From: Octopus sinensis | Taxonomy: Eukaryota | NCBI RefSeq assembly: GCF_006345805.1 | Contig: NC_043001.1 | Span: 105,958,001 to 106,022,000, forward strand | Direction of reading: 5' to 3' | DNA length: 64,000 nt | Part shown: positions 16,087 to 51,499 of the stretch, in pieces | Numbering within the stretch: position 1 is the first letter of the stretch | Layout: each line of letters begins with the position of its first letter | Translations under genes and position numbers: made by a program | Notes under the pieces: generated by a model | The model's database searches: none | Told to the model about the DNA's origin: nothing | Seen by the model: the letters and a program-made list of their open reading frames with translations, nothing else

Positions 16087-16130
<44 letters not shown>

Positions 16131-16239: not shown

Positions 16240-16274
<35 letters not shown>

Positions 16275-16279
16275 TATAT

Positions 16280-16440: not shown

Positions 16441-16500
16441 GTGTGCGTGTGTGTACACACACACACACACACACACACCACACATATATATATATATATA

Positions 16501-16720: not shown

Positions 16721-16810
16721 ATATATACATACCGGTTCTTCTCTAAGTGAATATCGAATATCTGCATAAATATAAGCTTGAAAGTTGGGCACTATACCTG
16801 CAATTCCGCC

Positions 16811-16981
16811 GGAGTCATTTACATCGACTCCATAGTTCCACTAACACATCTTTTATCGATTTCCTAAAAGATGAATGGCAAAGTCGACCTCAGCAGATTT
16901 TGAAATCAGAATGTAAAAATGGATGACATGAAGCTGAGCAATATCTCCGGCCTTTTAACAATTCTGCCAGCTGGCTGCCTT
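16811..16981 (-). mobile_element. Degenerate SINE family B (duplicate ~18771-18941)
   Basis: ggcaaagtcgacctcagcagattttgaaatcagaatg...ttctgccagctggctgcctt. Confidence 0.7.
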
Positions 16982-17136
16982 GTCTACACAATTAATACAG
17001 TCAGATAAATGACTAATAAGAAATTTTCCGATTCTTAATCACTGGGATTTTTCCTATACAGGACAGCGCTCTGCATTATTAAAATGGCTATTAATGTTCT
17101 TTTAGTTTATCGTTGCCAACGCTTGATTAATTTATG

Positions 17137-17285
17137 ATGGCAAACTGGCAGAATCGTTAGGAATCTGGGTAAAATTCTCAGCGGTATTTCTTCCGAGGTT
17201 CAGTTAGCTCTTCATCCTTCGGGGTCGATTTAATCAAGTTGTCACATCTCCAAACCTGCAACCTAATGCCAAAATTTCAACCCAA
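17137..17285 (+). mobile_element. Degenerate SINE family B (duplicate ~19097-19245)
   Basis: aactggcagaatcgttag...ttcatccttcggggtcga. Confidence 0.65.
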
Positions 17286-18202
17286 CATTTGATTCATTTA
17301 AAGTCGTGAGTCACAGATAATTCAAATAATTTACCGACGCTATGGTGCATTAATCCATCATTACAGTAAGTAAAACTACACATAATGCAAAATACGATAC
17401 AGCAAAATAGGGCCTGCCCCCGCTCTCTCTTTCCTTCTACCTATCACCTCTTCCTACTTCTGCTTGTTTCCTTCTTTCTCTTTCTCCCCGTTTCCCACCT
17501 TCACTCTCCCTCTATCTATCTCTATCTATATATATATATATGTGTATGTGTGTGTCTGTTCCTGTGAATCATTGAGATTATTAATTATGAGAGCTAGTAT
17601 TATTGCACATATCTTCCCCATAGATAAATAACGATTAAACTCAATTCGTGGAATCCATGCCCAGGCTACGTGACAAAAACTATCGATGGAAGCTTTCCAC
17701 TAACATCATTAGCTCTTTAACAATTTATCTTTCATCTCCTTTCTCTTCTCCCCCCCCCCACAGCTCTTTCTACGTATTTATTTTGATTTTGGGAATCTCT
17801 GACAATGTGTTTTGATTATAAGATAATGCATTGTAGCTTGGTATCGTCCTATCACCGCTGCTCACAATGACTTAAATGCGTGTCACTATTTCTTTGTGCT
17901 CGTCCTTGAAAGGTCATTGGATTAAGGATCTGGGATTTATATTAGCACCGGCTTCGAGAGTAAGTAGCAGTTTATATATATTCTCTGAATTCTAAGATAT
18001 ATTCTCTAACCTTTAGCAAGCCGGATATCATTCAAACTTCCTCTGTGTGTGTTGTGTGTGTGGTATGTAAGTGTGCGTGTTGTGTGTGTGTGTGGTGTGT
18101 GTGTGTGTGTGTAAATATATATACAGCAAAAACTGTCCGATGAACGGCAACGCGAAACTCAGAGTAACAGGTTTTGTAGAATTTTCTGCTGCTTTAATAA
18201 AG

Positions 18203-18237
<35 letters not shown>

Positions 18238-18413
18238 TATATATAGGGAGAATTCGCAAACAAAAACAAAAGACGAAGACAGGTGGTGTAGACAACAAAC
18301 AGATGTATTAGTATAGCGATCGGAAGTGAAGAAGTCTTTAACGTTTCGACCCTACGCTCTTCCACAGAAGGAACACAGAAAGAAACAAGGAGAGAAAATG
18401 TTTGTGCGTGTGT

Positions 18414-18461
<48 letters not shown>

Positions 18462-21400
18462 TTCTTTATTGCCCACAAGGGGCTAAACACAAACAAGGAC
18501 AGACAAAGGGATTAAGTCGATTATATCTACCCTAGTGCGTAACTGGTACATATTTAATCTACCCCGAAAGTATTAAAGGTAAAGTCGACCTCGGTGGAAT
18601 TTGAACTCAGAACGTAACGGCAGACGAAATACCGCTGAGCATTTCGCCTGGCGTGCTAATGATAATGCCAGCTCGCCGCCATATATACATACCGGTTCTT
18701 CTCTAAGTGAATATCGAATATCTGCATAAATATAAGCTTGAAAGTTGGGCACTATACCTGCAATTCCGCCGGAGTCATTTACATCGACTCCATAGTTCCA
18801 CTAACACATCTTTTATCGATTTCCTAAAAGATGAATGGCAAAGTCGACCTCAGCAGATTTTGAAATCAGAATGTAAAAATGGATGACATGAAGCTGAGCA
18901 ATATCTCCGGCCTTTTAACAATTCTGCCAGCTGGCTGCCTTGTCTACACAATTAATACAGTCAGATAAATGACTAATAAGAAATTTTCCGATTCTTAATC
19001 ACTGGGATTTTTCCTATAGAGGACAGCGCTCTGCATTATTAAAATGGCTATTAATGTTCTTTTAGTTTATCGTTGCCAACGCTTGATTAATTTATGATGG
19101 CAAACTGGCAGAATCGTTAGGAATCTGGGTAAAATTCTCAGCGGTATTTCTTCCGAGGTTCAGTTAGCTCTTCATCCTTCGGGGTCGATTTAATCAAGTT
19201 GTCACATCTCCAAACCTGCAACCTTGTGCCAAAATTTCAACCCAACATTTGATTCATTTAAAGTCGTGAGTCACAGATAATTCAAATAATTTACCGACGC
19301 TATGGTGCATTAATCCATCATTACAGTAAGTAAAACTACACATAATGCAAAATACGATACAGCAAAATAGGGCCTGCCCCCGCTCTCTCTTTCCTTCTAC
19401 CTATCACCTCTTCCTACTTCTGCTTGTTTCCTTCTTTCTCTTTCTCCCCGTTTCCCACCTTCACTCTCCCTCTATCTATCTCTATCTATATATATATATA
19501 TGTGTATGTGTGTGTCTGTTCCTGTGAATCATTGAGATTATTAATTATGAGAGCTAGTATTATTGCACATATCTTCCCCATAGATAAATAACGATTAAAC
19601 TCAATTCGTGGAATCCATGCCCAGGCTACGTGACAAAAACTATCGATGGAAGCTTTCCACTAACATCATTAGCTCTTTAACAATTTATCTTTCATCTCCT
19701 TTCTCTTCTCCCCCCCCCCACAGCTCTTTCTACGTATTTATTTTGATTTTGGGAATCTCTGACAATGTGTTTTGATTATAAGATAATGCATTGTAGCTTG
19801 GTATCGTCCTATCACCGCTGCTCACAATGACTTAAATGCGTGTCACTATTTCTTTGTGTTCGTCCTTGAAAGGTCATTGGATTAAGGATCTGGGATTTAT
19901 ATTAGCACCGGCTTCGAGAGTAAGTAGCAGTTTATATATATTCTCTGAATTCTAAGATATATTCTCTAACCTTTAGCAAGCCGGATATCATTCAAACTTC
20001 CTCTGTGTGTGTTTGTGTGTGTGGTATGTAAGTGTGCGTGTTTGTGTGTGTGTATGTGTATGCGCGCGCGTGTGTGTTTGACACATACGACTTTCAGCTA
20101 AAAGTCCACATTGAATTTATGTTCTTTTACACTCTGAGTTCGACAAAGATGACGATCACCTTTGCTTGTTATCTTCATAGAATTCATATGTAAATGTAAG
20201 AGTTATAACTTTGGCGGGAATTATTTAATCCTGTGGTTATTACTAAAACCACTTTTACAAACTTTAATACTCGTATGTGTCTCACTGGAGGATAAATGGA
20301 GCACTGTTTGTGAATCACTTCACCATGGTTAACACCAAATACAACCGGCGAGATTTCCTGTACCAAGTGACCGGCAACAGAATCGTAGCCACAACGTCTT
20401 GTACATGTACCTCAGCCGACTCTGCATTACTGCCACAACTTCTTGATACAGCACTTCAACTATCCAGTACCTTGACGATGAACTGGTATTTACCATCCTT
20501 GTATCTGTAAATTCTTCTAACGTCATATTATAGACTTTTTCAATGCTCTGTACTTATAGCACAGGCATACATCCATGCCTGTACACATACACACTTTGTT
20601 CTCATGACTCACACACATGTTAACATATAAATAAAATCCTTCTCTTAAACTTTCTACCGGTTGTGTCTTTCTTTTCCTTCTGGCACATAGACGCATTTAT
20701 TCTTTTCATATTTATCGTATCGGCCGTGTGATGTGCAAAGGAGCCATTGTCGCCACCTCACTTCGCGCGGTCGTTTACCAGTTTATTGGTTTATAAAATC
20801 GTACAAATATTCAGTTACTATTCATTAAAGGTTGGTGATATTTTGTGAAGTATTAATTTAGTGGGTTGATTTTATAAAATACAGTTCGTCAGATATTTCT
20901 TATTTAAAGTATATATTATGAAGTAAGTTCGGTGAGATATTAGCTTTTTAGATCGTATTTATATATTAATTTTGTTAGAATCTTCTTTACAAATACCTCT
21001 TCAATAAAGTTAAAATTTAGATCATAATTTACGTGCGAAAATTCTGATTAAATGGAAGTAAATGATACAAATAATGAATGGATAGTTAATTAAATCTACC
21101 TATGACAAAAGAAATTCATATTGAAAAGATTGCCCGAAGAAGCTGTTTATGAGAATAAGTATTTTCAGGGTGAGGATAATTTTAAAAGATTTACTTTCAT
21201 AGGTAATCTTCGACAAAATAAATTGTGCGTTTAATTTAGAGAAATGTTAATAAATTTCAGTTGGTTTCATTTTCATAAATATTGCGATTATCTGATATTA
21301 CCTAATGAAGAAATATATTGCGGATATTGTGAGAGAAATATTTCCGCTTGGTGGATATTTCTGCCACAAGAATGAAAATAATTACACACCATTGAGCTTT

Positions 21401-22462: not shown

Positions 22463-23897
22463 TTTGGGTTACTTGATTGGACGCTTTATGAGATCCGAGC
22501 CATTGATGTAAAAATTCGAAAAATACTAACAAGCACACATAATTTCCGCATAAACAGTGACGTAGACTGCCTCTACCTAAAATGAAAACAAAGCGGCAAA
22601 GACTTAACAACGATGCAAAATACCTTTGAATGTCGTATCATATCCCTTCGGCAACATCTTTTAACCACCAAGTGTCGAAGTGCATCCCTTGACCGAGTTG
22701 GCATACATAAGGCTGATAACATCATAAGACTTGGAAGGCAGCTCCTTGAGCAACACTCTTTGTCTAATAACCTAGAATACATGCCCAAAGACGTCGCACG
22801 ACTCTACTGCAATGTATCATCAGAGGAAAGGATGAACCTATATGAGCAGCTGACTATGCATTGATGTATTAGTAGAAAACTCCGAGATGATAGTGACATT
22901 GATCATTAAACCAGCGTATTATGGATCAATAGCCGGATTACTACTTTCCACTTTGAAGGGTGTGCATTTGCAATCCAGAAACAGGGATAGAGATGCAGGA
23001 AGAGCGGTAAAGTGTGACAACCGATGCCGACTTTGTGGAGTTATCAACATCATAAGAAGTCGTCTGAAAATGCCATCACTGTATTATCTGTCGATGAGGT
23101 GTGATGTTATAGCTAAGCCACTCTAATTAAATCCGTTGGAAGGATAAACCCAGGGACAAGGAAATAAGAACCCACAGTATCGTAGAAGCCATAGCCACTC
23201 ATACTAAAAAGAAGTGCTGTAGGAATGTTCCAGTGAAGACCTCAATAAAATGTAAACACAATAGACCTGATATAATGATTTAGGATAGAGAAGAAGAACT
23301 ATGCAGAGTTGTGGAAATAGCTGCCAAGCGGATGTTAACTTAAAGCTAAAGATCAGTGAAAAAGAGAATGCGTACGCTAAACTATTGAAAAATCTGAAGT
23401 TAATCTATCCAGATTACAAGTTCAAGTATATACCTGTAATTATTGTGGCTCTGAGATATGTAAAACACTGCTTAAATATTAATCTTGAGAAATTGGGTTT
23501 CTCAAAACCAGAAAGGAGGAAGCTAATTCGAAGACGACAAATCCAAGCCATCACTGGAACTGTAAAAATCTGTGAAACTTTCCCGAAGTTTAGCAATTAA
23601 GTATATATGAGCATATCTAGGTATACAACAATATGCATGAGAATACATAAATAAAACAAAACGTACAAATCTGCACTTACATACATGTACACACACACAC
23701 ACATACATACATACATACATACATACATACATACATACATACATACATACATACATACATACATACATACATACACACAAAAATACCCTGTTGTTGATGT
23801 TGAAATCTCAATGAAGGAGTCATGGATCTAGGTTAGAAACAGATTTTTTCTCTATTGGAAAGAAATCTTGAAATAAAACACGAATAATGACATACAT
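22463..23897 (+). mobile_element. 5'-truncated R4/Dong-type non-LTR retrotransposon (post-RT region, CCHC knuckle, restriction-like endonuclease, 3' UTR); inactive
   Basis: Broken frames: FGLLDWTLYEIRAIDVKIRKILTSTHNFRINSDVDCLYL; CDNRCRLCGV...MRCDVIAK (decayed CCHC); CKHNRPDIMI*DREEELCRVVE (PD..E motif); KLKISEKENAYAKLL...IPVIIVALRYV...GTVKICETF. The 3' UTR contains (CATA)n and ends gacatacat. Confidence 0.85.
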
Positions 23898-25039
23898 AAA
23901 TCCATGCATACATAAGTAATCTGTCTTCTAATTTTACTCAGAACTCGAGGTTCCTGTACAAAATACATGCGCAGTGTATTGCATCATGATCTAGAACTAA
24001 GCGCAACATTGGTACAAACGACAGCATGTATGGCTAATCTATTTATACACCTTGGTTTCCTACTTACATCTTTTATCGATTACGTAAAACTTTTCCATAA
24101 TTTTATTTTCAATTGTGTAATAATGTAAGACTACAAAAGAAGAAATTATCGAATAGAAAATGTACATTTGTTACCTGACTAAATCCTCTATCCTCTAGTC
24201 ATTTTAGTCGCTTCAGCTTCATTTGATGTTTCTGTTTTCATACATTTCTAATAAAATTTTCCTTCGATTAATTCGTATACTGTTAGGATACCCCCACTGA
24301 GGCGATACTTCAAGCAAACTAGCATTTTAAACGGAGTGTTCTCAGGAGCGTGTCTGAAGTTTAGTTTCAACATAACATGTCTTATTTATCACAGGAAACA
24401 TAATTGAATAGCCATTTAAAACTGCTTAATGACACATCGTGTGTAAAGATACCGGAATCAAATTCCAATTGACGTGAATCACATCAATGCATCTATTTAA
24501 TTCAATGGTACAAGAGTTTAGAGTTCCGGATAAAATTTTCGGAAATTGCCTCTTCAATATAATGAACATTTTATTACATTGTAAATGGATGCAGCGTTTG
24601 TGTTTAATGGATAGGTACTGAATACGTACAAGTGAATTTGTGATGTAAAGAAACCAAACCTTTGTTATATAGCTTTCTACATTCATCCAACATCAATTAC
24701 CAAATGAAGAAAACGAAACGTAATATAATTGAAGCGACTTGTGTCTAACAAAACAAAATACGTGACAATAGGTTTAATAAAAGTATTTGATATAAAGGCA
24801 ATGTCAAAGATTGAGCTCTGTTTTCAGTTCGTGTCAAAAATCATACGATTAACAATAAAGGAAATTATCGGACATTTTATGAAGAACTTTGCAAAACTGT
24901 CCTTTACAACAAATATAGCAATGCAAGCGCACTTCTAAGACATATAAAGTGACAAGAGCGGAGGAATGATTTATCGTTCGCCATCCTATTTCTCTCTCTA
25001 TCTATCATTTTCCCTCTCTCTCTCCTTCTCTCTCTTTCT

Positions 25040-30496: not shown

Positions 30497-31022
30497 GGGT
30501 GTGTGTTTGTGTGTACATATATATATATATGAATATATATATATATATATATGTGTGTGTGCGTGTGTATATATGTGTTTATGAGTGTATATGTATATAG
30601 AGAGATAAAATTAGAACGAAAGATAATGTGTAATCATAAATCCATCTCCACCGCTGGTGATTGAGTCTACGCATACACTCCGAAGTCTTTGAAGTCCGTA
30701 GAGATATGTATTTACGTTTCATTATGTTATGCTGTTTTCTGTGTAATTAATTACTCATTTCTAAACATATAAGAATTAGCTGTATCTCGAGATAATGACA
30801 AATGTCATGACATTCAAGAGATAACATTTGAATAGATTTAATTTCATATATCTATATCTGCATGTTAATTAAGTTAATGAATTTAAAGTATTAATTTACC
30901 GATCATATATTTCTAGAAATACACGATAACCATGTGTGTGTGGGTGTGCATGCATACATGTATATATATATATACCGATATATACATATATATATATAGA
31001 CATACATATACACAGATACACA

Positions 31023-31056
<34 letters not shown>

Positions 31057-31311
31057 TATATATATATATATGAAAAAGTTGCGGAATGGAATAGATAATA
31101 TATGGGTTACATATATGTTTCATAGTGAGTAGAACCTCAGAAGTGACAAATATTTACCGTGAAAAAGAACGTCTTCAGTTTATCGTACCTATATTCGGAA
31201 AAATATGCCCGACCTTCCGTCTCAATAAACAAATATTGTTCCCAAAAGTTGTTTCTAATATCTAATACGGATTGCTTAAAGCTAACTTTCTGTTTACACA
31301 TCGATATCTGG

Positions 31312-31380
<69 letters not shown>

Positions 31381-31469
31381 TGTGTGTGTGTGTGTATGTA
31401 TGTATGTATATAGAAGTATATATATATAAATGTATGCATGCACACACACACATACATTACATGGTTATC

Positions 31470-31503
<34 letters not shown>

Positions 31504-32767
31504 TTTCTTTCTTTATTCATACTTTCCTATGTATGTCTATATATATATATATATATATAGTTCATCTTCAATCCTGTAACGACGTTCTGTTACTATGACA
31601 GCCAAACCGATAATTAATCACCCGTTGCTCGCGCAAAAACAACAGGACTAAACCTTTTAATTAATCCCGGCAGACCCGAGCAAGACTGTCCAAATCCCAT
31701 TCTATAGGGATTCTGGACACCATCTCTTTTTAGAGGCGATCTTGGTAAAAACCTACTCTCTTTGTCGACGTAGGGAGATTAGTGACTCAGCCATGTTTCT
31801 AGCCTATCGTGACTTTTTAAGCAAACCAAGACATGGTTGTATAAATGTAAACTAATGTTTTTTTGGGGGTTTTGTTTTTGTATTGAGTAGAAATTTCCGT
31901 AATGCGAACGGTTAGTCAAAGAGAAATTAATTTCACACGCCCACATAGAATGAAGCCAATAGCAAATATAATTATATGTTACAGACCGGGAGTATACTGA
32001 TCTTTATCGTATTGGGACTTCGAAGTACACGTTCTCCAGTTTGTCGTTGTATTTTCACAAGACACTCAGTTTATTAGCAAAAGAAAACTTTGTAATACGT
32101 TGATGTTTTGACTGGGCTGTCTCCCTCAGTTCAAACCTACCACCTGATTATTGGATCTACATAAACATACTGACATTTTTTACAGCAAGAAGCATATCAT
32201 AAATCATTATCTGATGGCCACTGAATCCGTCTAACCGATACAATTTATGAACATACGAAATTATGTGCGTGTAAAATTTATGTACTGAACAAAGGCAGGA
32301 AAACGATGATATATCTTCTCAGATATCAGATATCTACACCGAAGCACGTGAATCAAAAGAATGCCCTATCAATATATTCCTAGTTCTTTCTCGGTGTCTT
32401 GAATGTTAATATACTGATCGCTGTTTCTCCACTTAGACACGGTTTATGCACCATGCATTCGATATCTTGTCGGCAGAGATGGGGGTGATTCGTTGCATCA
32501 CTGTGTTCTGACATTGTCGTGTCTCTTCAGTATAAAATACGTTCCGGATAATAATTCAAACTACACCGGTTGAATTATTACCCGGTGTAGCTTGCTGAAA
32601 AAAACAAAACACCAAGCAAAATATCTTGTGATGCGTGTTGATCACAGTCGATATCATCACTTGCACCCGACATAGAGAGATACTAAACAATCACATATAT
32701 CTTCGTTCCTTTTTTAGGGACCACCAGAGCTGATCATGAATTACAAAGCTCTATTCTCTTTTGCGTG

Positions 32768-32995
32768 GAGGCGCGTGGCTTAGTGGTTAGGGTGTCAGCA
32801 TCATGATCGTAAGATTGTGGTTTCGATTCCTGAACCGAGCAAAACACTTCATTTCACGTTGCTCCAGTCCATTCAGCTGGTAAAAATGAGTAACACTGCG
32901 ATGGACTGGCGCCCCGTCCAGCTAGGGAACGCATACGCCATTGGAACCGGGAAACTGGTCCCATGAACCTGGCTAGGCTTTAAAAGTGTGCATTT
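32768..32995 (+). mobile_element. tRNA-derived SINE family C, tail type 2, inserted in the array
   Basis: A box tggcttagtgg, B-box-like tttcgattcc, core ttcacgttgctccagtcca.tcagctgg.aaaaatgagt shared with 45562-45889. Confidence 0.8.
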
Positions 32996-34639
32996 ATTTT
33001 TTCTATTATTCTCTTTTGCCTTAGAACAGCTGCTTCATGTAGACGAATTTCATTTCATAACATATTCTATCCATAAACGTCAAAAGACAATGGGATACTA
33101 CAAAGCTTTGCCCAGATGTGTCAGTTCATTCCAAACAACCAACAGATCAATTAATCTAACCAAGATTGACGATCTTCGTTCAAAGAAATCATCAAACACA
33201 TTATATGTCTATGTGTGTTGAGGAGTTCCAAAAGAATGACTCATAATGTACACACAAAACAGAGAAACATAAACGTTGCTGTATCTATCCATTCTTTATA
33301 GATTTTGGTAGACCCGGACGTAAATGAAATAATTGCAGCTTTGTTGGTAAAAATCGAAGAACATCTTCACAACTCAGACGATTGGTGTTGACAGCATTCT
33401 TGTTTGGTTGATATAAGTGGACATTGTAACAGCGAAATGCTAAACAAAAGGATCTAATTTATAGAAAGAAGAAGTAAGCTATTTGCTGATATTTGTTGAT
33501 TACTCACCATCCAATATCCTTTTATCAGAGAAATTTAAAACAATCAAGTAATACGCTGTGGCATCCCGAGCTCATATATAGTAATCGCTGTGTTCATATC
33601 GGCTTGGGAAACATTTCTCTTCCTTTTAAACGATGTTTGTTCATCGCACACTCGGTACATTGACAAAAGATTAATTTGTGATATTGAAGTTAAACAAGAT
33701 TAGTGCACCATGTAAATAGAATTTAGGAATCAAATTATTTGCTGACGTGCGCTGATGTTGGCAAAAAGGATAATGAATCATCGCTCGCATGCAGAATGGC
33801 GAGGATAACTATGGCGTATTTATTCAGTCTTAAAAGAATTTTACAAACACCATCGTGTATAAACTCATCAAATTATGGCTCTTCATCATCTTCGGCGAAC
33901 ATCTATCTTTGAAAAGATGTAAAGAAACTTTCATTGACGTAAAGAAAGTTTTAAGTGACTGTATTTGTTTTTCAGTGGGTGTGTCGTCAAAATTGCACCC
34001 ACATTAACGGACCCAAACGTGAATACAAGCATTTGTTTATAGAATGTAGCATGCACGTTATTTCTCAGTGCGTGCTGAAAGCTTCCATGCCCAGGATTAT
34101 TGCTTGGTTGCACGCAGACAGAGAGAAATAAAGCTAATTATATATCTCTTAATCCTTAATATGTTCTAATTGAAAGGCACGGGTATTGCTAACAGTAGAA
34201 TTATTTCGCGTTTCATGTATCCTCCGTCATTTAATCGAAGTGTACTCAAGACGTCTTTGAGAAGTCGAAGAAATGTGGCCAAGTTGTGTCTGATTTGTCG
34301 ATGCTACCCTATGATGATTGCAAGTATGTAGAAGTAGTGATACTTCTTTTTTTAATATATAAACCAACAATTAAATATCTGCGTGCTGATAGATACCACA
34401 TCAGTTAATAAGTCCCCCAAAACTACGGAGAATCTATACGATGTGGTGTTTATTAATCTCTTGGCACGTTTTGATTGACACGAACGTCAATGCCTTAATC
34501 ACTAACACATTTCGAAATCAGAGACATCTCCCTTTCGCCGATGTTTCTGCACAATACATTTAATACATTTACCGAAGATTGTTTTGTGACACTACACAAT
34601 AATATTAAGTACTGTCTCGATTTGCAGGAATCATGTGGT

Positions 34640-34850
34640 GAGTTACCCGGTTTCTATGCTGTATAAGTAACCGAGAACACGCCTGTACCTGCTGAACCGG
34701 ACGCCTGCTTGTCGAAGGTAATTACCTTATAGCTGAGTAGACTGGTGCAATGTGAAATAAAATGTTTTACTTAAAAGCACAACGCAATGTCGGGATATGA
34801 AAACCAAGATTTTGCAAAGGTGAATGCAATCATTTAATCACCGGAGCTCA
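34640..34850 (-). mobile_element. Degenerate SINE family C, inserted in the array
   Basis: agctgagtagactggtgcaatgtgaaataaa is the reverse complement of the family C core; its length accounts for the 520-nt gap between array units 34517 and 35037. Confidence 0.6.
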
Positions 34851-36036
34851 CACGTAAACTAGAAGAATGCTGTATCTTATTTATGAACACAAGCGAATAC
34901 ATTCTTTGCTATTGGGTACAGACGACATTCACGTGCAGACAGGATAAAGATAATCAGATGACTGACGTTTCTATACATTTTTAATAAGTCTTAGTAGACG
35001 CGATCGTCAGTTTAATCGCCGTTGTTCTATTTCCTTTTCAGAGAAAATCCGCCCATTGAACTTTGGTATTCACATATCATTCGAATTATTTATATAACCC
35101 CACTAAGAGTGACAAAACTTTTTAGAATTCGTTGTATTTTACTGAGACCTATACACTGCGCAACGAATCTAAACAAGAGTAGCAAGTTTTCGTCGTACAA
35201 TGAGCAAACAGTTTGCTAATGTGTATTGATGTAACTTTTCAGGTGTCGGCAAAATAACACGAATTAAAGTATATATTTATTTGATCTTAATACGTTCTGG
35301 GAGACCAGAGTCTGAGAATCCTAAGGGCTGTTGTATTCGCATTTCGGAGAATGTCTCCGTTAAGATGATTCTTGTTAAACACACTCATTCTTCACAGATG
35401 TAAAAGTATTTTGAGGTACTGTTGTGTTTCGACACTGTTTTGTCTTTTCTATTAACGCTAACCCTGGATCAATGGATCTAAAGAAGATTAATGGCTCTTG
35501 GTAATAAAATTTTGCAAACAAATTAATTGCTGGAGCGTGCTGATGTCTGCCAAACCGATAATAATTCATCACGTGCGCACAGAATAGCTGAAATCAAAGC
35601 ACTGGTGATTCTTTTCATTCTTAATGCATTTTAGCAAACCCGAAACCTAAATATACTAGTCGCTATTGTATTTGGAATTCGAAGGTTATCCTCTCCTTTT
35701 AGTCGTTGTGTGTTCACAACTCTATTCATTCACCGAACAACTCTTTGTGATACTGGGGTCGAGATACTGTCTGTGTCTCTTCAGTCAATGCTGCCCTTGA
35801 TCAATAAAGCTAAACCAATGAAATGCTATTTTTTTAAAGGAATCAGTGAACATATTATATTCTAGCGCATAAAGAATTCATCATGTTTAGGCAAAACGGC
35901 GACAACTAAATCGGTGCTATTTCTATGCATTCTCAGAGCTTTATGGCAGACCCGATCACGTATATTGTAATAGAGGTTTTATTTGGTCCTCGGAAAAAAA
36001 ACTTGCTCTAGAAAATTGCTATTTTTTAAATCTCAC

Positions 36037-36213
36037 AACGCAGGAGTTGCTGTGTGGTAAATAGCTTGCTTAATAGCCACATGGTTCCGGGTCCATTCCC
36101 ACTGCGTGGCACCTTGGGAAAGTGTCTTTTAATAAAGCCTAGAGCCGACCAAAACCTTGTGAGTAGATTTGGTAGACAGAAACGGAAAGAAGCCGTCGTA
36201 TATATGTATATAT

Positions 36214-36260
<47 letters not shown>

Positions 36261-36498
36261 GTATGGATGTATGTGTGTGTGTGTTTATGTGAATTCTTTG
36301 TCCTCCCAACATCGTCTGACAACCGATGGTGTGTTTACGTCCCCGTAACTTAGCGGTTCCACAAAAGAGACCAATCGAATAAGTACGAGGCTTACAAAGA
36401 ATAAATCCTGGGGTTTAATTGCTCGACTAAAAAGGCGGTGCTCCAGCATGGCCACAGTCAAATGACTGAAACAATTAAAAGAGTAAAAGAGTAAAGAG
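36037..36498 (+). mobile_element. Full-length SINE family A, inserted in the array
   Basis: Collinear with 4370-4833. Confidence 0.9.
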
Positions 36499-37911
36499 TA
36501 CTCAGCAACAAGAATTTGTAGTAAAGATCGTTTCCCAACATAACCCAGAAATCGCGATACACAGATACTGTTTTGAGCTGAGTGGGTGTGCTAGATTCCC
36601 TTGTTTGAGAATATAAGAACACAGATCGTGTCGTATAGCCAGCTGGAGATGATATCTCGTGGGGCTAAATTAGAGCAAAAGTTATTCTTAAACCAGGACT
36701 GCCATGTTATGTTGGCAAACAATCTTTACTATAACTTACTCTAGGTGTGAGTTTTCAACACAGCTTTAATTGATTAATAGGGATTTGGGACCCTTCAGTT
36801 GTTTGGACGGTTCCGTTCAGTGAAACATACCCCCTGTTCCAGGTACCAGAACGTGTGTAATGCTACGTCATTACACAAATCAACAAAGACTGTACAGGGG
36901 CGTGCACGCGTCTGCAAAAACTAATAATTATTAGGAAGCATAGCATAACCGAGCTAATCGATATAATACCATGCCTATTCATCATTAACACTTGTGGCAG
37001 TGCCGAGGATGGATATAGCAATCCCTATTTTATTTGAACTGTGGAGCACATCTTAGTTTAGACACTGTGTATTTGCAAATCACTTGATTTATTGATACCG
37101 CCGTTAAAGACGATTAAAGGTATTTACTTGTAAAAATCAGTAAATAAATCTTTCTCTGGTTCCCGCTGATGTTTGCCAATGCTATAATAATTCATTGCTT
37201 GCTCGAAGAACAAAGAGAATCTGATCAATAATGCACTGATTCATTCTGGCAGGCCGAGTGTAAATATTATCTATAATGTTGTTTTATTTCGTCTTCGGAG
37301 AACATCTCCTTTAAGATGTTATGTTTTCACAGAGCATTCATTGAGGTAAGGTGAATTCGACAGAACATTGCTTTTCAACCTTACTGTGTTTATTTCATGT
37401 TACACCTGGAAAAACGATCTAAACAAGATTAGTAGCTATTTTTAGCAGTAAGCAGCAAACAACTGAAGGACGGTGATGGCTGTGAAACCGATACAAATTC
37501 ATGATATGTAAGGAGAAGTGAGCAAATCCAAGTGATAATTTAACTATTAAATCTTAATACATTGTGGCAAACACAAGTGTGAGTATTTTATTCACGGTTC
37601 CGTTTCGTTTTCGACGAACATCTCTCTTTAGAAGCTGTGTGTTCACAACACAAGCAATATATCAACGAAGAGCGAATTGGAGAAACCACGGTTAATAACA
37701 CGTTTCGTCTTTTCACTCAAAGTCACACAAGGAACGATAAGTTATTTTCTTTATGCATCCTGGTGTTTGCCAAATCTATAACAACAATTTAACAGACGCA
37801 GCAGAAAGTCAATCAAAACAATATCGCATCTAACCATTTGTACTACATCCTGGGGGGGGGTGAATAATTAATTTATTATCAGAAGCTGGAACTTAACTGT
37901 CAAAGAAGAAA

Positions 37912-38226
37912 TTTTAGTCGAAAACATTGCCACCAGTACTTACTTTTTATAAGCCTGGTACTTACTCTATCGGTCTCTTTTGCCTAGCCACTAAGTCACG
38001 GGAACGTAAACACACCACCACCAGTTGTGGGGCAGCGGTGGGGGGATTAATACAGACGCAAAGGCACATGCACTTAGATAATATATATATATATATACGA
38101 TGGCTCCTTTCTAGGTTCCATCTACCAAATCCATCCACGAGGCTTTGGTTGGGCCACTTTGTGGGACTGAAAGGGGGACCATGCTTTTTGGGATGCAAGT
38201 TTCTTAACATACGGTCAAGTATAACT
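37912..38226 (-). mobile_element. SINE family A, degenerate
   Basis: tacttactctatcggtctcttttgcc...aagtcacgggaacgtaaacac...ccatctaccaaatcca. Confidence 0.75.
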
Positions 38227-39704
38227 CCACCTTTCCATCCTCCTCCCTTACTCCTCCTCCCCGTCTTCGTCCTCCTCATCCTCATCCTCAACATCATCAT
38301 CATTATCATCAGATACATAAAATGCTCCACTGCCTATGACTATGGAGCCATTTTTGTTTTGGCTAGCGTGTACAGATTTTTGGAAACTGAAAACTCGTCT
38401 CACCGTCTTCCGTCTTTGCCTGGGCTTTGTACGAGAAACCAGGATTTTCTTGCGTATAATAACCACACAACCGAAGCCTAAATGCTGCAGTTCCTATAAC
38501 AAGTTTGATGCGATGATACTCAGAGATGAGTGCCATAAATACAGTCTAGTTTTTGATGCGGAATATCTTCACGACTTGCTACTGACATATCTATAATTTT
38601 CTCAAATTATCACTGTTAAACATATCTTAGGCGATAGATAACAATCTTGCAAGAGTGTGAAACAGTTGAAGTGAATTTGCCTGACGTTTCTAATGATAGA
38701 AATTACTACAGGATCCATAATCTGAAATCTAGTAAGTTATCTATATACAAACCAATACCTTGAAAGAGAAGCAAGCGATATGAATATCAGATGTGTGCAT
38801 ATTACATAAGTCCTTTATAAGAGAATATAATACTCAACAAAATGCAGCGAATGTAACAATATTCTAGTATAACATATTTAGATAGGTCACTAATATAAGA
38901 TATCTCTAAGCATTCATTAAATAACACGGAGAGACTGAGGAATTTCAACCGTGTTTCGTGGTCTGCTACCACAACAGCTCCTTTATAGGATCCAATTAGC
39001 TCAAGACATCATCAGGAGGAACCACGTCCGCTTTCGGCCCCTACTCCTCTACCGTTTTGACGTAGCGGAGCCCCCCTTTCAGAGGTGTCTTCAGCTCTGG
39101 TGTTGGGTGCATGTCTGCTTTAATCTTCTTTCTTCTGTTCCCTTGCCTCTTCGATATAAGATGTTCCGGCGGGAATAAGAGAGCGCTAAACTTCATCAAG
39201 TATATATGAAATATAATAGACAAGAGTAAATTATTTTACATAATTTTAAGCAATGTTACAGCATCGTTGCAGCAAGAATAATGTTTATTGCTGGAAAGAT
39301 GTGAAAACTGTTGGTGATGTCAACATATTAGAATAAATTACACTTCATGGATTGTTAGTATTACTAAAGATAATTTCAGATCCATTTAAAAATGAGTCAT
39401 TGTAAAGAGCTGCCGATTCTGCGCAAAAACAAAAACGAAAATCAAGGTCTTTGCATTCATAGAAATAAATAGCAAGTTCTACTCACGGGGAAATATACAA
39501 CATCCACACAATGAATCGGAATCTGTGTGTGACAGATGAATTACATTGGATAATGTCGCTTAAAATATGGGTCGATAGGATCCACTGATGCTCGTAACTG
39601 CTGGAAGGTCTCTGATCAAAATGCATATCGTGTAAACCATGTGAGGCCTGAAAATTCGACATTTACGATATCCAGTGCTGCATTTTTGTTATATTCGTTT
39701 TTCT

Positions 39705-39890
39705 ATTCTTTTATTCTTTGTAATGTTTCAGTCATTTGACTGCAGCCATGCTGGAGTACTACCTTTAGTCGAACAAATTGACTGTCTGTAAGCCTAGTAC
39801 ATATTCTATTGGTCTCATTTGCGGAACCGCTAAGTTACGGGAACGTAAACACACCGACATCAGGTGTCAAGTGATGGTGGGGGACTATCT
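39705..39890 (-). mobile_element. SINE family A 3' module
   Basis: gtttcagtcatttgactgcagccatgctggag...gctaagttacgggaacgtaaacac. Confidence 0.75.
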
Positions 39891-39923
<33 letters not shown>

Positions 39924-39932
39924 ACACACACA

Positions 39933-40009
<77 letters not shown>

Positions 40010-40034
40010 ATATATATATAATATATATATATAT

Positions 40035-40230
40035 AGAAAATCCTAAAGAGAAACAAACAAAAAACAACAACGGGAGGACGTGGTACATGTAATGTATTAG
40101 CAGACTCTCAGGAAAGGAAAGAAAGATGGTTTAACGTTTCGAGTAGGCGCTCTTTTACGGAAACAGAAGAAAGCCCAGAAGAAGGGAAGACGGAGGAAGA
40201 AAATCGCCAACGATTCATATGTGGTTACAT
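40035..40230 (-). mobile_element. Penelope-type short repeat with decayed hammerhead-like motif (40129-40164)
   Basis: Minus strand GUUU CCGUAAA A GAGC GCCU ACUC GAAA CGUU AAAC. Confidence 0.45.
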
Positions 40231-43693: not shown

Positions 43694-44579
43694 AGGTCAA
43701 TCCAGCTGCGAATTATCTTAACATATTGACTTCTGTGCCTTCCACCATAATCACCTGCTCAGTTCACCAGTTAAAATTTCGCCAAACAAAAATTTTTAAA
43801 ATAGACATATTTTTTTTTTTTTTTTTTTTATTATTATTTTATTTTACAAGAAAATCTGATTTCTTAATAAGACATAACTCTCTTAGTCTATGATTGTTGT
43901 TTGATAACCATGTAATCTTATTTGAAGACATATAAAACGCTACCAGTCTGGATAACTATCAAATTTTAAGAAGAGATAATCATACTTGAGAGAAATACAT
44001 GGACAGAAGCCAATTATAATTATCAATGATTGTTGTTCTGTCAGCAATCTCTCCATTAACGTGATGTACGAAACAATTTCTTGATCTTTGTCTGTTTGAT
44101 CGTTTGTCAAATGAGAGAGCAATATTCAGCCGCACTTTTTAAATCGTGTATTTCAAACACTTTTGAAGTAGTGAAGCATTTACAAATATTTTATAATTAA
44201 TTCCCTCGGTGTTTTGTAAAAGTAGATTCTTTTGTTTCTTGTGGCATGTCTGTTTCAGAAATAACTATGAAATTATACATTGCAAATGCCTTTGATTTTT
44301 TTTTAAAAAGGTGATACATATCCTAATCAAAAGTCTATATAGTTTTTTTTTTCATTTTGTATAATTTAGATATTTGTTTAGTAATAAAATGTAGCTTTTA
44401 TAGTGCAAAGAAAATAAAGTAGAGTCCCTCGAGTAATTAACAAAACCCGCAGTAATGTGTTTGATATGCTTGTGAGTGTGTGTGTGTGTGTGTGCTTATG
44501 CATATATGGTTGTGACGCAAACACGTACGCACACTCACTCATTCATTCACTCACTCATTCTTACACATACACACACACT

Positions 44580-45060
<481 letters not shown>

Positions 45061-45561
45061 GTATATACATATAGAAAATCCTCTGAAATAGATACACATA
45101 TAATGTTTCGTACGAGTGAAAATTTTGCAAGAGTAAAGAACTATGAATATGCAACGACATCAGGTTTGTTCCGCTCTGCTCATTGAGTTGCGGAAACGAC
45201 TTTTAAAGAAAGAAATCAGTCGAGAAAAATAGTTATCTATCCATGAGATATCATTTGAAATTCTCATCACGCTTCTTAATTAGTTCAAGAAAAATTTTAA
45301 ATTTGAATAGATTCTTAAAATATCATGAGCAAACTTTAGTAATTAATAAAACAATATACTTTTCTTAAATAAATTGCATCGCAATCATTTTTTGAATTAT
45401 TGTTGAAAATTAGTTTCAATTGAAATCTTCAAAAACAATGTCACGCAAAGAAAAGAATTTTAACATCGCTTCGTTCTTCGTTCCTTCATCATCCTTTGAC
45501 ATCTGCCGCTAACTATGATAACTAAACATTCGTATGTTGTTACTCTCATATAACCAGGTGC

Positions 45562-45889
45562 TGTGAGGGCGCGTGGCTTAGTGGTTAGGGCATTCGGCTC
45601 ATGATCGTAAGGTTGTGAGTTCGATTCCCGGCGACGCGTTGTGTCCTTGAGCAAGACACTTTATTTCACGTTGCTCCAGTCCACTCAGCTGGCAAAAATG
45701 AGTTGTACTTGTATTTCAAAGGGTCAGCCTTGTCACTCTCTGTGTCACGCTGATTATCCCCGAGAACTACGTTAAGGGTACACGTGTCTGTGGAATGCTC
45801 AGCCATTTGCACGTTAATTTCACGAGCAAGCTGTTCCGTTGATCGTATCAGCTGGGACCCTCGTCGTCGTAACCGGCGGAGTCTTTTTT
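45562..45889 (+). mobile_element. Full-length SINE family C (tRNA-Met-like head) with 11-bp target-site duplication
   Basis: TAACCAGGTGC at 45551-45561 and 45890-45900; A box tggcttagtgg; ggctCATgatc at the anticodon position; B box gttcgattcc. Confidence 0.9.
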
Positions 45890-46440: not shown

Positions 46441-47489
46441 ACTTAGTGAATGGATAAATGATATAGTGGTAAATATGTCTTAGGAAAATATTGTACTATA
46501 GAAATGAATTGAGTTGCAGAAGTACGAGTTAAGCGTTATTACGAATAAATCTTTGGTTACATGCGTTTGAATCAGTCAGTTTGACGAGCACCAATTTAGA
46601 ATAGTCAGCTCCCATTCAGGGTCAGTATAACTGAAACACTTGTTTCAAATCATATGTGATTCTTCCACTTTCGGAAAGCTAATATAGAACTAATCCAAGA
46701 GATAATAATATACTGTGATTGCTTACTGTAATGGGGATTGTAGCTACACGTCGACGTTGATGCTATTAAACGAAGACAAAATATCCAGCTTAGATATTAA
46801 TATATTTTTCCTAAAGCATATTTGTATAGACAAAATTGCTTTTCTTGCGACACAGGTGTCAGTTGAACATTAACTGTGATATATATTTGATCAAGTTGAC
46901 TGTGAGGGCATATAATATGCATATTTTGCTTATATATAGTTGCATTATTTTAAATCGGTCCATTGCTTTAATATTTAAAGTCTTATATATGTAGTATGCT
47001 ATTTGTCTCAATAAAGCCACAATGTGATCGTTTCAAGCATAAATATTTGTCAGCGTATATACGAAAAGAAACCAAACATAACGCATTTTGTTTCACGAAC
47101 AAAACATATAAGCTATTGATTTATAAGTACACCTACATTCCACATTGGCAGCTGCTGTGTTCATAACTTTATGGAAATAGATATGCCTCTTTATATTATC
47201 TACTTTTTCGTTTCGAAATATCTCCTTTTATCACATGTATCAATATATTATACAGCAAAGAGGCGCTAGTTGTAATGTTTATTGTAGTCTGTAAGAAGTA
47301 ATAAGAGATTTAAAAATATATTGCTTCCATGATCTTACTATTAAACAATTCCGTTGTTTGGCTGCAGGTACTAGCATGTTCATCGTGGGCTGAAGTAATA
47401 TTGGTGAGCGGAAAGTAATTGCGCTTTCAGATTTGAAATTTATTGAAATATCTCTCAACAGATAATATCTTTTTTTACCTTTCTGTTTT

Positions 47490-47765
47490 ACGTTTTTCGG
47501 TCATTTGACTGCGACAGTGTTGGGGCGTGCATCTTGAAAACATTTAGTCAAGAGCGTCGACCGCGGTACTTATTAAAGTATGGTGCTTATTTCCTTCTTT
47601 ATCGCTAAGTTACGGGGCCGTAAACACACCAACACACATTGTCAAGTAGTGCTGCGGGTCTACCACAGACAAAAAGACGCGTACACACACTCATATATTT
47701 ATACGTACACACAGACACACACATGCATACACACATCTACACACACAGACACACACACCTACACA

Positions 47766-47834
<69 letters not shown>

Positions 47835-47960
47835 AGGGCTTCTTCCAGTTTCTGTCCACTAAATCCACACTCAAGTAACTTAGTTAGTCCGAATCTGTAG
47901 TGGGACTGAAACCGGAACAATATGGTTGGGAAGCAAGCTTCTTACCACACAACCACGACA
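47490..47960 (-). mobile_element. SINE family A
   Basis: 3' module at 47490-47640, then (CA)n(TA)n, then a partial head ending cttcttaccacacaaccacg. Confidence 0.75.
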
Positions 47961-47979
47961 GCATCTATATATTTATATG

Positions 47980-50317: not shown

Positions 50318-50630
50318 TGGTCGACTCTCCCGCCGTTAGACGACGTATGATGGATCGACAATTTCATATTAAACATTCACACACATTATTTGTTTATGAT
50401 TATCATACGTTTGTGTAGGCATAAGCTCGCTCCAGCCATCAAATCGATATTACCCGTGAACTTGCTACGGGCGCCACATGTCAGATGATCGCAGAGAAAC
50501 GTGAAATGAAGTGCTTTGCTCAAGAACACAACAAGATATTTCCTTCCAACAAGATATTTCTGGTCGGGGAATCGAACCCACGGTCTCGAAGTCTTGAGTG
50601 CAACGCCTTAACCACTGAGCCATGCGCCTT
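50318..50630 (-). mobile_element. SINE family C-related copy, tail type 3
   Basis: aacgtgaaatgaagtg...ggggaatcgaacccacg...taaccactgagccatgcgcc; internal 14-nt duplication caacaagatatttc. Confidence 0.7.
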
Positions 50631-51499
50631 CACACACACACACATACACACATACATACATACGTATATACACACATACATACGTACATACATATATGAG
50701 ATTATGTGTTGAAGTATAGCTACTAATGTTCTTTTTTAACATCTACAAGGTAACAATATGGATGGCATGATGAAGGAAGGTATTTCGTGAATGATCTTTC
50801 TGAGGTATATATGAGTGTGTGTGTTTCTGTGTGTGTGTCTGTGTGTGTGTGTGTGCGGGCGTATGCCTGCGTGTGTGTTTCTCCTAATGTGTGTTTGCTT
50901 TTGTAGATGTGTAATTGCAACTGCGTGTCTTTAGAAGCTTACATATAGGAATGAATGTATGAGAAATTGACTTTAAACATGTCTTATTGGGTATAAAATC
51001 TTAAATACATCAATTATAATCCAGACAGCGTGTAGGAGGCCACCAAATCAGCCGTCGGTCCAACATAGCTAATATCTCTTCTAATGCTCCGGCACAAACG
51101 GAATGCGGGGCGTGATTGTCCATAAGAATCAATTGTTTTGCAAAGCTGTTTTATCCGTTTTTATAAACAAATTGTTTTTTTTTTCCCGTTTGTTTGTAGA
51201 AAAATAGATTCTAAATCACTCTACCATTTCAACGTCATGCTTGCTTTCCCTATTGCCCCTGGTGTTGGTTATAATATATTACTTTCACAGATCAACGCCT
51301 ATATTTAAAATCTGTATTCATAGTTTGTTATTGTGATTCTAAACTAATGCAAACAGATTACTATTAGCTTATGTTATTGGTTCAATGAATTTCAAACACG
51401 AGTAAGTTTCACTCTACTTTCTCAAGATTTCAAGACAAATAAAACCATTGCTTCCAGCCCTGAAATAGATTGAATTAAAACAGGCAAAACAAACTCTAA

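What the first reader, a model, noticed from the sequence alone, without database searches (positions are those of the whole stretch)
31560..37850. Hidden ~310-bp tandem array of about 17-18 deeply diverged units with conserved blocks
Seen: four blocks recur in fixed order: (a) TATTTCGTCTTCGGAGAACATCTCC, (b) GATCTAAACAAGATT, (c) GCGTGCTGATGTYTGCCAAACCGATAATAATTCAT and (d) CTTAATACATTYTGGCAGACC. Uninterrupted periods are about 250-340 nt and most are 305-321. The d-to-a spacing is 45 nt in most units (35298/35343, 35944/35989, 37565/37610, 33559/33604, 34167/34212). Three SINEs (32768, ~34640, 36037) interrupt the array, and their lengths account for the longer gaps, so the array predates them. 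Outside the SINEs the 6.3 kb is almost free of the microsatellites that fill the rest of the window. It matches no element I recognise and is invisible in the ORF track. Inference: the alternation of conserved blocks and variable spacers suggests constraint, for example a tandem ncRNA/miRNA-type cluster, a regulatory site array or a relic of a repeated-domain gene. An old unconstrained satellite remains possible.
Basis: partly seen in the sequence, partly recalled or inferred. Interest (0 to 1): 0.85.

Follow-up and report, generated by a model that had tools for sequence, protein, structure and literature searches.

The report
Old decayed 310-bp tandem repeat array
The region really is about 18 head-to-tail copies of a ~310-bp unit in an octopus-type genome, but every test I could run fits an ancient tandem repeat decaying without constraint, not a hidden RNA, regulatory or protein-coding cluster.

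Summary
One unit used as a query finds eight more + strand copies. An iterated profile finds about 18 head-to-tail units from 31595 to 37854 and nothing elsewhere in the 64 kb. The median period is about 311 nt. Three SINE-type inserts from two families explain the long gaps.

The interpretation of constraint is not supported.
- Units are about 52% identical pairwise, with no neighbour or higher-order pattern.
- Neutral uniform-rate arrays, simulated and run through the same pipeline, give almost the same block and spacer pattern. Only the overall variance is borderline high. Spatial clustering, the best block and indel clustering are within the simulated range.
- The c/d inverted repeat shows no covariation, and RNAalifold finds no consensus structure.
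- 100-nt folding z-scores match control DNA, and Rfam and ARAGORN find nothing in the units.
- The consensus has stops in all six frames, with no codon periodicity.

Best reading: one old amplification burst (Jukes-Cantor distance about 0.4 from the consensus, roughly 100 My or more on the published octopus transposon clock), then decay without homogenisation and later SINE insertions. Whether a transposon carried it could not be tested, because both flanks are overwritten. No orthologous sequence could be fetched, so cross-species conservation remains untested. Interest is low.

The parts
31560..37870 (+). Whole array: about 18 head-to-tail units (U00-U17) of a ~310-nt repeat. The left end is cut inside a unit by a (TA)n tract. 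The right end (profile match ends at 37854) runs into a G-run and then a SINE on the - strand.
   Evidence: Profile hits; unit alignment.
31560..31711 (+). U00, a partial unit with blocks c and d only
   Evidence: profile positions 195-297.
31712..32018 (+). U01, strongly decayed (60% identity to the consensus)
32019..32414 (+). U02, with about 80 nt extra at its 3' end
32415..33017 (+). U03, interrupted near its 3' end by a SINE. It also holds a unit-specific palindrome at about 32546-32598.
32765..33001 (+). SINE insert, family S1. A-box and B-box-like motifs TGGCTTAGTGG and GGTTTCGATTCC are visible by eye. It is flanked by a target-site duplication at 32750-32764 and 33002-33019.
   Evidence: Sequence; other copies at 45563-45709, 50493-50636 and in O. 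vulgaris locus L001 at 82% identity.
33018..33351 (+). U04, full length
   Evidence: E 1e-44.
33352..33607 (+). U05, strongly decayed (55% identity to the consensus)
33608..33890 (+). U06, with a 51-column internal deletion
33891..34188 (+). U07, full length
   Evidence: E 3e-45.
34189..34516 (+). U08, block a region unrecognisable
34517..35036 (+). U09, split by an insert of about 240 nt
   Evidence: profile 2-80 at 34518-34595 and 118-299 at 34838-35007.
34596..34837 (-). SINE insert, family S1 in reverse orientation. Similarity was detected over 34623-34772.
   Evidence: E 6e-9.
35037..35342 (+). U10, full length
   Evidence: E 1e-43.
35343..35677 (+).
35678..35988 (+). U12, full length
   Evidence: E 1e-49.
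35989..36722 (+). U13, split by a SINE straight after block a. The remainder (36506-36722) is very decayed, with a d-like TTATGTTGGCAAAC at about 36706.
   Evidence: Sequence.
36030..36505 (+). SINE insert, family S3, with an internal TA/TG microsatellite at 36198-36290
   Evidence: 84% identity to 4372-4829.
36723..37039 (+). U14
   Evidence: E 7e-40.
37040..37293 (+). U15, 5' half decayed
37294..37609 (+).
37610..37870 (+). U17, the last unit, truncated in block d
   Evidence: profile 1-287.
37912..38213 (-). SINE of family S3 just beyond the right end of the array. It is not part of the array but obscures the original boundary.

Best explanation
This is a fossil tandem repeat: a euchromatic, satellite-like array that is no longer being homogenised. 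A sequence of about 310 bp was amplified head to tail to at least 18 copies in one episode or a short series of episodes. The mechanism is inferred to be unequal exchange, replication slippage or rolling-circle-type amplification, possibly inside a mobile element. After that the copies evolved independently by point substitutions and small indels, with no further concerted evolution. SINEs later inserted at three positions, and a SINE and a microsatellite overwrote the two ends. The 'conserved blocks' are the best-surviving stretches of the ancestral unit, about as expected by chance at this level of decay. The array most likely has no sequence-specific function.

Shown: periodicity, orientation, divergence pattern, the inserts, and the absence of ORFs, RNA structure and known RNA families. 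Inferred: the amplification mechanism, the age and the lack of function.
For: - Eighteen same-strand head-to-tail units, and none elsewhere in the window.
- Mean pairwise identity is 52% on profile columns, flat with distance along the array (0.50-0.53 for neighbours 1 to 7 units apart), so the genealogy is star-like.
- Identity to the consensus is 0.55-0.76, giving a Jukes-Cantor distance of about 0.4. The inserted SINEs are 71-84% identical to other copies.
- On the octopus transposon clock quoted in PMC13282606 (distance 0.09 = 25 My, 0.2 = 56 My), the array dates to about 100 My or more, well before the SINEs.
- Neutral simulations (star and burst trees, uniform rates, same nhmmer/hmmalign pipeline) reproduce the mean conservation, the fraction of columns at 80% or more, the autocorrelation and the best 15-column block. 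Their indel clustering is even stronger: chi-square 38.5 +/- 19 against 28.4 observed.
- No RNA consensus structure was found on the c-d region or on whole units.
- The c/d 10-bp stem is paired in 60% of cells against 63% in shuffles, with no compensatory excess.
- 100-nt fold z-scores average -0.26 against -0.11 in control DNA.
- The Rfam E-value scan hits only microsatellite-type look-alikes outside the units, and there are no tRNAs.
- There are no shared ORFs. The doubled-unit consensus (about two units) carries 9-16 stops in each of the six frames, and there is no 3-nt periodicity in conservation, p 0.39-0.9.
- CpG observed/expected is 0.97 against 0.92 for the window.
Against: - Column-conservation variance (0.030) and the standard deviation of the smoothed profile (0.058) lie in the upper tail of the neutral simulations, reached by 0-5% and 0-13% of them. 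Mild rate heterogeneity along the unit is therefore not excluded.
- The simulations omit context-dependent mutation, and about ten statistics were examined.
- No orthologous or paralogous array could be retrieved, so conservation between species is untested.
- No expression or chromatin data were available.
- The real array aligns over more profile columns (297) than the simulated ones (about 240). I did not explain this.
Confidence: 0.75

Rival explanations
1. The array is the internal tandem-repeat module of an old mobile element. Examples are a Helitron/Helentron-type non-autonomous element or a MITE carrying satellite-like repeats, as is common in molluscs. It was inserted here as a unit or expanded after insertion. 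This concerns origin only and is compatible with neutral decay.
For: - Short euchromatic arrays of 100-500-bp monomers carried by Helentron-type elements are the dominant pattern in the oyster genome, with up to 29 monomers and a microsatellite in the left flank (PMC7492417).
- This array has 18 units, sits in repeat-rich euchromatin-like sequence, and abuts a (TA)n/(TG)n tract on its left.
- A star-like genealogy fits a single amplification.
Against: - No flanking sub-terminal inverted repeats or 3' palindrome could be recognised. The left end is cut inside a unit by a microsatellite and the right end runs into a SINE.
- No other copy of the unit occurs in the remaining 58 kb of the window or in 20 kb of O. 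vulgaris DNA.
- The monomer is about twice the 140-180 bp typical of the oyster elements.
- Microsatellites are everywhere in this window, so the left-flank tract means little.
Confidence: 0.2
2. The array is a functional periodic platform. Either it is a cluster of binding sites (enhancer or insulator type, with blocks a, c and d as the sites), or it is a repeat-derived non-coding transcript or small-RNA source whose units are kept by weak selection.
For: - There is a borderline excess of between-column variance and of regional contrast over the neutral simulations.
- The d-to-a spacing is steady at 29-35 nt.
- Block a contains a TTCnnnGAA-type palindromic motif that is intact in 6 of about 14 readable units (by eye). 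About 3.7 would be expected from the per-site conservation.
Against: - There is no significant spatial clustering of conserved columns, and the best block is within the neutral range.
- The blocks as typed recur at 3 or fewer mismatches in only 1 to 5 units.
- There is no RNA structure, covariation or hairpin excess and no Rfam family.
- Three SINE insertions were tolerated inside units.
- Several units (U01, U05, U13) are almost unrecognisable.
Confidence: 0.07
3. The array is a relic of a repeated-domain protein-coding gene, or an array of alternative (mutually exclusive) exons with short introns.
For: - The unit length of about 310 bp is in the range of a ~100-residue domain or of an exon plus a short intron.
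- AG...GTAAG-like motifs flank a stretch of about 30-35 nt after block a in U11 and U16 (sequence).
- The consensus has a 45-codon open stretch across blocks c-d.
Against: - The doubled-unit consensus (about two units) has 9-16 stops in each of the six frames.
- Only 2 of 13 units keep any open frame across c-d.
- Conservation shows no 3-nt periodicity, p 0.39-0.9.
- Period lengths are not conserved modulo 3.
- The splice-like motifs are absent from most units.
- ORFs in the array are short and share no frame.
Confidence: 0.02

Closest known systems
Degenerate ('dead') satellite-like or macrosatellite arrays in euchromatin
   Same: Head-to-tail copies on one strand, a unit of a few hundred bp, a short array (6.3 kb), no coding capacity, and later interruption by interspersed repeats.
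   Different: It is far more diverged than arrays normally catalogued: about 52% pairwise identity, and Tandem Repeats Finder misses it at its most permissive setting. There is no sign of concerted evolution or higher-order structure. Genome-wide copy number is unknown.
Satellite-like arrays carried by Helentron-type non-autonomous elements in molluscs (Cg_HINE and the pearl family; PMC7492417)
   Same: The host is a mollusc. Both are short dispersed arrays of monomers a few hundred bp long, all in one orientation, with a microsatellite next to one end.
   Different: The defining flanks (sub-terminal inverted repeats, internal inverted repeat, 3' palindrome) could not be found. The monomer is about 310 bp rather than 140-180 bp. 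No second copy was seen. Divergence between monomers is about 48% here against 8.5-21% in the oyster clusters.
Repeat-derived tandem miRNA clusters (C19MC in primates, the Sfmbt2 intron cluster in mouse; recalled from my own knowledge)
   Same: A tandem array of units a few hundred bp to kb long, interspersed with SINEs.
   Different: No unit folds into a hairpin more stable than background, and there is no conserved stem or covariation. There is no Rfam miRNA match inside the units.

Membership tests
Tandem repeat / satellite-like array | Three or more head-to-tail copies in one orientation, with similarity beyond chance | tested here: met
   A single-unit query finds 8 further + strand copies (E 2e-17 to 0.15). 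The profile finds about 18 units and none elsewhere.
Tandem repeat / satellite-like array | Regular period | tested here: met
   Periods are 254-396 nt after removing inserts, median about 311. The d-to-a linker is 29-35 nt.
Classical satellite DNA | Concerted evolution: high identity between monomers, and neighbours more alike than distant copies | tested here: not met
   Mean pairwise identity is 52%, flat with distance along the array.
Classical satellite DNA | High genomic copy number, with long arrays in heterochromatin | not testable with these tools
   Only this window and 20 kb of O. vulgaris DNA were available. Neither holds another copy.
miRNA cluster | Each unit holds a hairpin of about 60-100 nt that is more stable than shuffled sequence | tested here: not met
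   Mean z-score of 100-nt windows is -0.26 against -0.11 in control DNA, and the fraction below -3 is 3.5% against 2.5%. The only strong hairpin, at about 32515-32600, is specific to one unit.
miRNA cluster / structured ncRNA | A conserved stem supported by compensatory changes | tested here: not met
   RNAalifold predicts 0 pairs. The c/d stem is 60% paired against 63% in shuffles, and its covariation score is below the shuffle mean.
Known RNA families (Rfam 15), tRNA | A match to a curated covariance model or to the tRNA cloverleaf | tested here: not met
   At E up to 1, only microsatellite-type miRNA look-alikes and weak scaRNA/snoRNA-model matches were found, all on microsatellite-rich DNA (including the SINE's internal microsatellite at 36170-36374) and all far below gathering scores. 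None lies on unit sequence. ARAGORN finds 0 genes.
Small-RNA or lncRNA locus | Transcription or small-RNA production | not testable with these tools
   No expression data were available.
Repeated-domain coding gene or exon array | A shared open reading frame, codon-position periodicity and frame-preserving lengths | tested here: not met
   There are stops in all six frames of the consensus. Two of 13 units are open across c-d. Periodicity p is 0.39-0.9.
Helentron-type element carrying tandem repeats (HINE) | Left flank with sub-terminal inverted repeat, internal inverted repeat and microsatellite; right flank with sub-terminal inverted repeat and palindrome | tested here: inconclusive
   A (TA)n/(TG)n tract abuts the left end, but it cuts a unit internally. 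The right end is followed by a SINE. No recognisable element ends were found.
Helentron-type element carrying tandem repeats (HINE) | Many dispersed copies that share flanks | not testable with these tools
   No cephalopod genome can be searched by DNA. The metagenome pattern scans were empty.
SINE (the three inserts) | Dispersed copies elsewhere, with a target-site duplication | tested here: met
   Copies occur in the window and in O. vulgaris locus L001 at 71-90% identity. A 15/18-nt target-site duplication flanks 32765-33001.

The most novel reading that the evidence does not exclude
The array is an ancient periodic element held under weak purifying selection. Blocks a, c and d at fixed spacing would act as a repeated docking platform for a DNA- or RNA-binding factor, for example an insulator or enhancer array or a repeat-derived lncRNA scaffold. 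It would be conserved in register across octopods for more than 100 My while being invisible to standard repeat and gene annotation.
Probability: 0.05. Interest if true: 0.6.

Novelty: new member of a known kind. Interest (0 to 1): 0.2.

Why it matters
It matters little biologically, if the neutral reading is right. It is one more relic tandem repeat in a genome that is about two-thirds repeats.

There is modest methodological interest. At about 52% identity the array escapes Tandem Repeats Finder and would count as non-repeat DNA. Such fossil arrays may account for part of the unannotated fraction of cephalopod genomes.

The case also shows that apparent conserved blocks in an old array need a neutral simulation before they are read as constraint. 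If orthologous arrays showed block-specific conservation, the finding would become an interesting candidate for a periodic regulatory or RNA element.

Tried and rejected
- **Tandem Repeats Finder** at minimum score 30 sees no ~300-nt period. Profile iteration was needed.
- **RNA structure.** RNAalifold on the c-d region and on whole units predicts no pairs. An explicit count on the c/d stem shows no covariation. Sliding-window fold z-scores show no excess. The Rfam E-value scan and ARAGORN find nothing in the units.
- **Coding.** ORF lists, six-frame translation of the consensus, per-unit c-d translations and a 3-nt periodicity test were all negative.
- **Constraint.** Star and burst-tree neutral simulations gave only a borderline variance excess. 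Indel clustering looked significant by naive chi-square (p 0.0008), but it is a pipeline artefact, because 69% of neutral simulations exceed it.
- **Microsatellite paucity** has P of about 0.05, which is not remarkable.
- **Fetching relatives:**
  - Exact look-up of three window ORFs found nothing on record.
  - A protein search with 16 concatenated array ORFs found nothing.
  - A search with 4921 aa of concatenated flank ORFs also found nothing. It failed to recover P0001 even though the matching ORF was inside the query. Concatenated queries are therefore insensitive, and the negative is weak.
  - Two exact-pattern scans of metagenome contigs were empty.
  - A transposon-fragment ORF hit an O. 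vulgaris hypothetical protein. Its locus L001 shares only dispersed repeats with the window and is not collinear with it. It holds no unit copy.
- **Flanks** were checked for repeated or transposon-like ends, and none was recognisable.
- **Literature searches** for a described cephalopod satellite of this kind found none.
Full report

Yes. Tandem Repeats Finder, even at minimum score 30, reports only microsatellites and short repeats between 29 and 41 kb and no period near 300. A single candidate unit (37285-37609) used as an nhmmer query finds eight more copies, all on the + strand, with E from 2e-17 to 0.15. Five rounds of profile iteration give 19 fragments that assemble into about 18 head-to-tail units from 31595 to 37854. 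With filters off and E up to 100, nothing else in the 64 kb scores better than E=7.

Start-to-start periods are 254-396 nt after removing inserts, with a median of about 311. The distance from profile position 299 (end of block d) to the next position 1 (block a) is 29-35 nt.

The four blocks as typed are each the sequence of the best-preserved unit.
- Block a recurs once at 3 or fewer mismatches.
- Block c recurs once.
- Block d recurs four times.
- Block b recurs five times in the array, against 4.9 matches expected by chance in the whole window.

So the order and periodicity are solid, but the blocks are much less conserved than the finding suggests.

**2. The inserts**

Two interspersed-repeat families interrupt the array.
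- Family S1 lies at 32765-33001 (+). It shows tRNA-like A and B box motifs by eye and a 15/18-nt target-site duplication at 32750-32764 and 33002-33019. A second S1 copy lies in reverse at about 34596-34837.
- Family S3 lies at 36030-36505 (+) and carries an internal TA/TG microsatellite. It has about ten other copies in the window at 71-84% identity. One of them (37912-38213, - strand) sits just beyond the right end of the array.

Both families also occur in a 20-kb O. vulgaris locus at 72-90% identity. A transposon-fragment ORF at 23301-23597 has an O. vulgaris hypothetical protein as its only homologue. The window is therefore from an octopod genome.

Many of the window's microsatellites sit inside or next to copies of the S3 SINE family. 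The array's shortage of microsatellites is weak evidence of anything: 1 locus against 4.7 expected, P about 0.05, and 18.5-26.2 kb is equally free of them.

**3. Divergence pattern**

On profile-aligned columns, the units are 52% identical pairwise (range 37-65%; random expectation 27%). There is no dependence on distance along the array (0.50-0.53 for neighbours 1 to 7 units apart) and no higher-order repeat. Identity to the consensus is 0.55-0.76, giving a Jukes-Cantor distance of about 0.4.

PMC13282606 quotes an octopus transposon clock of distance 0.09 = 25 My and 0.2 = 56 My. On that scale the amplification dates to roughly 100 My or more. The figure is rough, because profile alignment inflates identity and the host species is not pinned down. 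The picture is one burst of amplification followed by independent decay without homogenisation.

**4. Is there constraint?**

I simulated 17-unit arrays from the consensus under uniform substitution and indel rates, using a star tree and two burst-type trees. I embedded them in random flanks and ran them through the identical seed, five-round nhmmer and hmmalign pipeline.

| Statistic | Observed | Neutral simulations |
|---|---|---|
| Mean column conservation | 0.681 | 0.676-0.707, set by calibrating the substitution rate |
| Fraction of columns at 80% or more | 0.27 | 0.26-0.31 |
| Lag-1 autocorrelation | 0.063 (lags 2-3: 0.043, 0.073) | 15-50% of simulations reach the observed value (lags 1-3) |
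| Best 15-column block | 0.833 | 3-20% of simulations reach it |
| Column variance | 0.030 | 0.020-0.026; 0-5% reach the observed value |
| Standard deviation of the smoothed profile | 0.058 | 0.039-0.048; 0-13% reach the observed value |

The variance and smoothed standard deviation are a borderline excess among about ten statistics. The simulation also lacks context-dependent mutation.

Small indels look non-uniform by naive chi-square (28.4, p 0.0008). The same statistic on neutral simulations averages 38.5 +/- 19, and 69% of them exceed the observed value, so this is an alignment artefact. I conclude there is no robust evidence that the blocks are constrained.

**5. RNA hypotheses**

In the consensus, blocks c and d contain a 10-bp inverted repeat (GTCTGCCAAA / TTTGGCAGAC). 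Across 13 units this stem is paired in 60% of cells against 63% in column shuffles, and its covariation score is below the shuffle mean. RNAalifold predicts no pairs on the c-d region or on whole units.

Sliding 100-nt windows on both strands have a mean z-score of -0.26 against -0.11 in control DNA from the same window, with similar tails. The only strong hairpin, at about 32515-32600, is a palindrome specific to unit U03.

An Rfam scan at E up to 1 finds only microsatellite-type miRNA look-alikes and weak scaRNA/snoRNA-model matches, all on microsatellite-rich DNA. One of them lies on the internal microsatellite of the SINE at 36030-36505. All are far below gathering scores, and none lies on unit sequence. 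ARAGORN finds no tRNA. A miRNA, snoRNA or other structured-RNA cluster is therefore not supported.

**6. Coding hypotheses**

ORFs of 45 aa or more in the array share no frame or position. The doubled-unit consensus, about two units long, has 9-16 stops in each of the six frames. Its longest open stretch is 45 codons across c-d, and it stays open in only 2 of 13 units. Column conservation shows no 3-nt periodicity in any segment, p 0.39-0.9. Splice-like AG...GTAAG motifs after block a occur in a few units only. A relic domain gene or an exon array is effectively excluded.

**7. Origin**

A transposon-borne origin is plausible a priori. In oysters, short euchromatic arrays of monomers are carried by Helentron-type elements with a microsatellite in the left flank (PMC7492417). 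Here the left end is cut inside a unit by a (TA)n tract and the right end is followed by a SINE. No element ends are recognisable, and no second copy exists in the other 58 kb of the window or in 20 kb of O. vulgaris DNA. I leave this as an untested sub-hypothesis about origin.

**8. External evidence**

I could not obtain orthologous sequence.
- Exact ORF look-ups found nothing.
- Concatenated-ORF protein searches found nothing.
- Metagenome pattern scans found nothing.

The concatenated searches are insensitive. One search missed a protein that one search had found with one of the ORFs inside the query. The only retrievable octopus locus (L001) is a paralogous transposon site. Cross-species conservation, expression and chromatin state therefore remain untested. 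These are the decisive experiments.

**9. Verdict**

The interpretation of constraint is not supported. The best explanation is an ancient tandem array that is no longer homogenised and is decaying neutrally (confidence 0.75). It may have been delivered by a mobile element. It is a new member of a known kind and of low interest, apart from the methodological point that such arrays are invisible to standard tandem-repeat annotation.

Noticed in passing
window 16117-17960 and 18081-19920: A segment of about 1.96 kb is duplicated in tandem at 99.4% identity over 1844 nt with 4 gaps. It is either a very recent duplication or an assembly artefact. It includes SINE and microsatellite sequence.
   Followed up: partly
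window ~32546-32598 (inside unit U03): A near-perfect palindrome specific to this unit (AATAATTCAA...TTGAATTATT nested with CTACACCGG...CCGGTGTAG). It gives the strongest fold z-scores in the array (-6.4) and is absent from the other units, so it is a local inverted duplication.
   Followed up: partly
window 1608-1880, 2672-3146, 4372-4830, 36030-36505, 37912-38213, 39703-40035, 47479-47963, 52895-53297, 54062-54481, 62131-62774, 63505-63739: A SINE family of about 470 bp carrying an internal TA/TG(CA) microsatellite. Many of the window's dinucleotide tracts lie inside or next to its copies. Copies are 71-84% identical to each other and 72-90% identical to copies in O. vulgaris locus L001.
   Followed up: partly
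window 23301-23901; L001 10150-10589: A transposon fragment with a 99-aa ORF. Its only database homologue is an O. vulgaris 'hypothetical predicted protein' (74% aa identity, 83% nt identity). The two loci are not collinear, so these are paralogous insertions. This places the window in an octopod genome.
   Followed up: yes
window 15353-15921: ORF fragments in several + strand frames look like a decayed mariner/Tc1-type transposase. This is by eye from the translations and was not tested against a family library.
   Followed up: no
window 30905-31071 and 31333-31489: Two microsatellite-bearing segments are inverted copies of each other (78% over 172 nt). They bracket about 260 bp of unique sequence immediately left of the array. 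Similar segments occur at 26845, 11552, 55687 and 60684, so this is possibly another small interspersed element.
   Followed up: partly
window 44551-45160 and 5412-6289: Two long low-complexity tracts. One is a minisatellite that gives CLSV/YLSI-type repeat ORFs. The other is a trinucleotide-type tract that gives poly-Thr and poly-Val ORFs of about 150-190 aa. These are artefactual ORFs, not genes.
   Followed up: no
tool behaviour: A 4921-aa query made of concatenated ORFs returned no hit, although it contained the 99-aa ORF that alone retrieves P0001 at E 5e-21. Negative results from concatenated pseudo-proteins in this search tool should not be trusted.
   Followed up: yes
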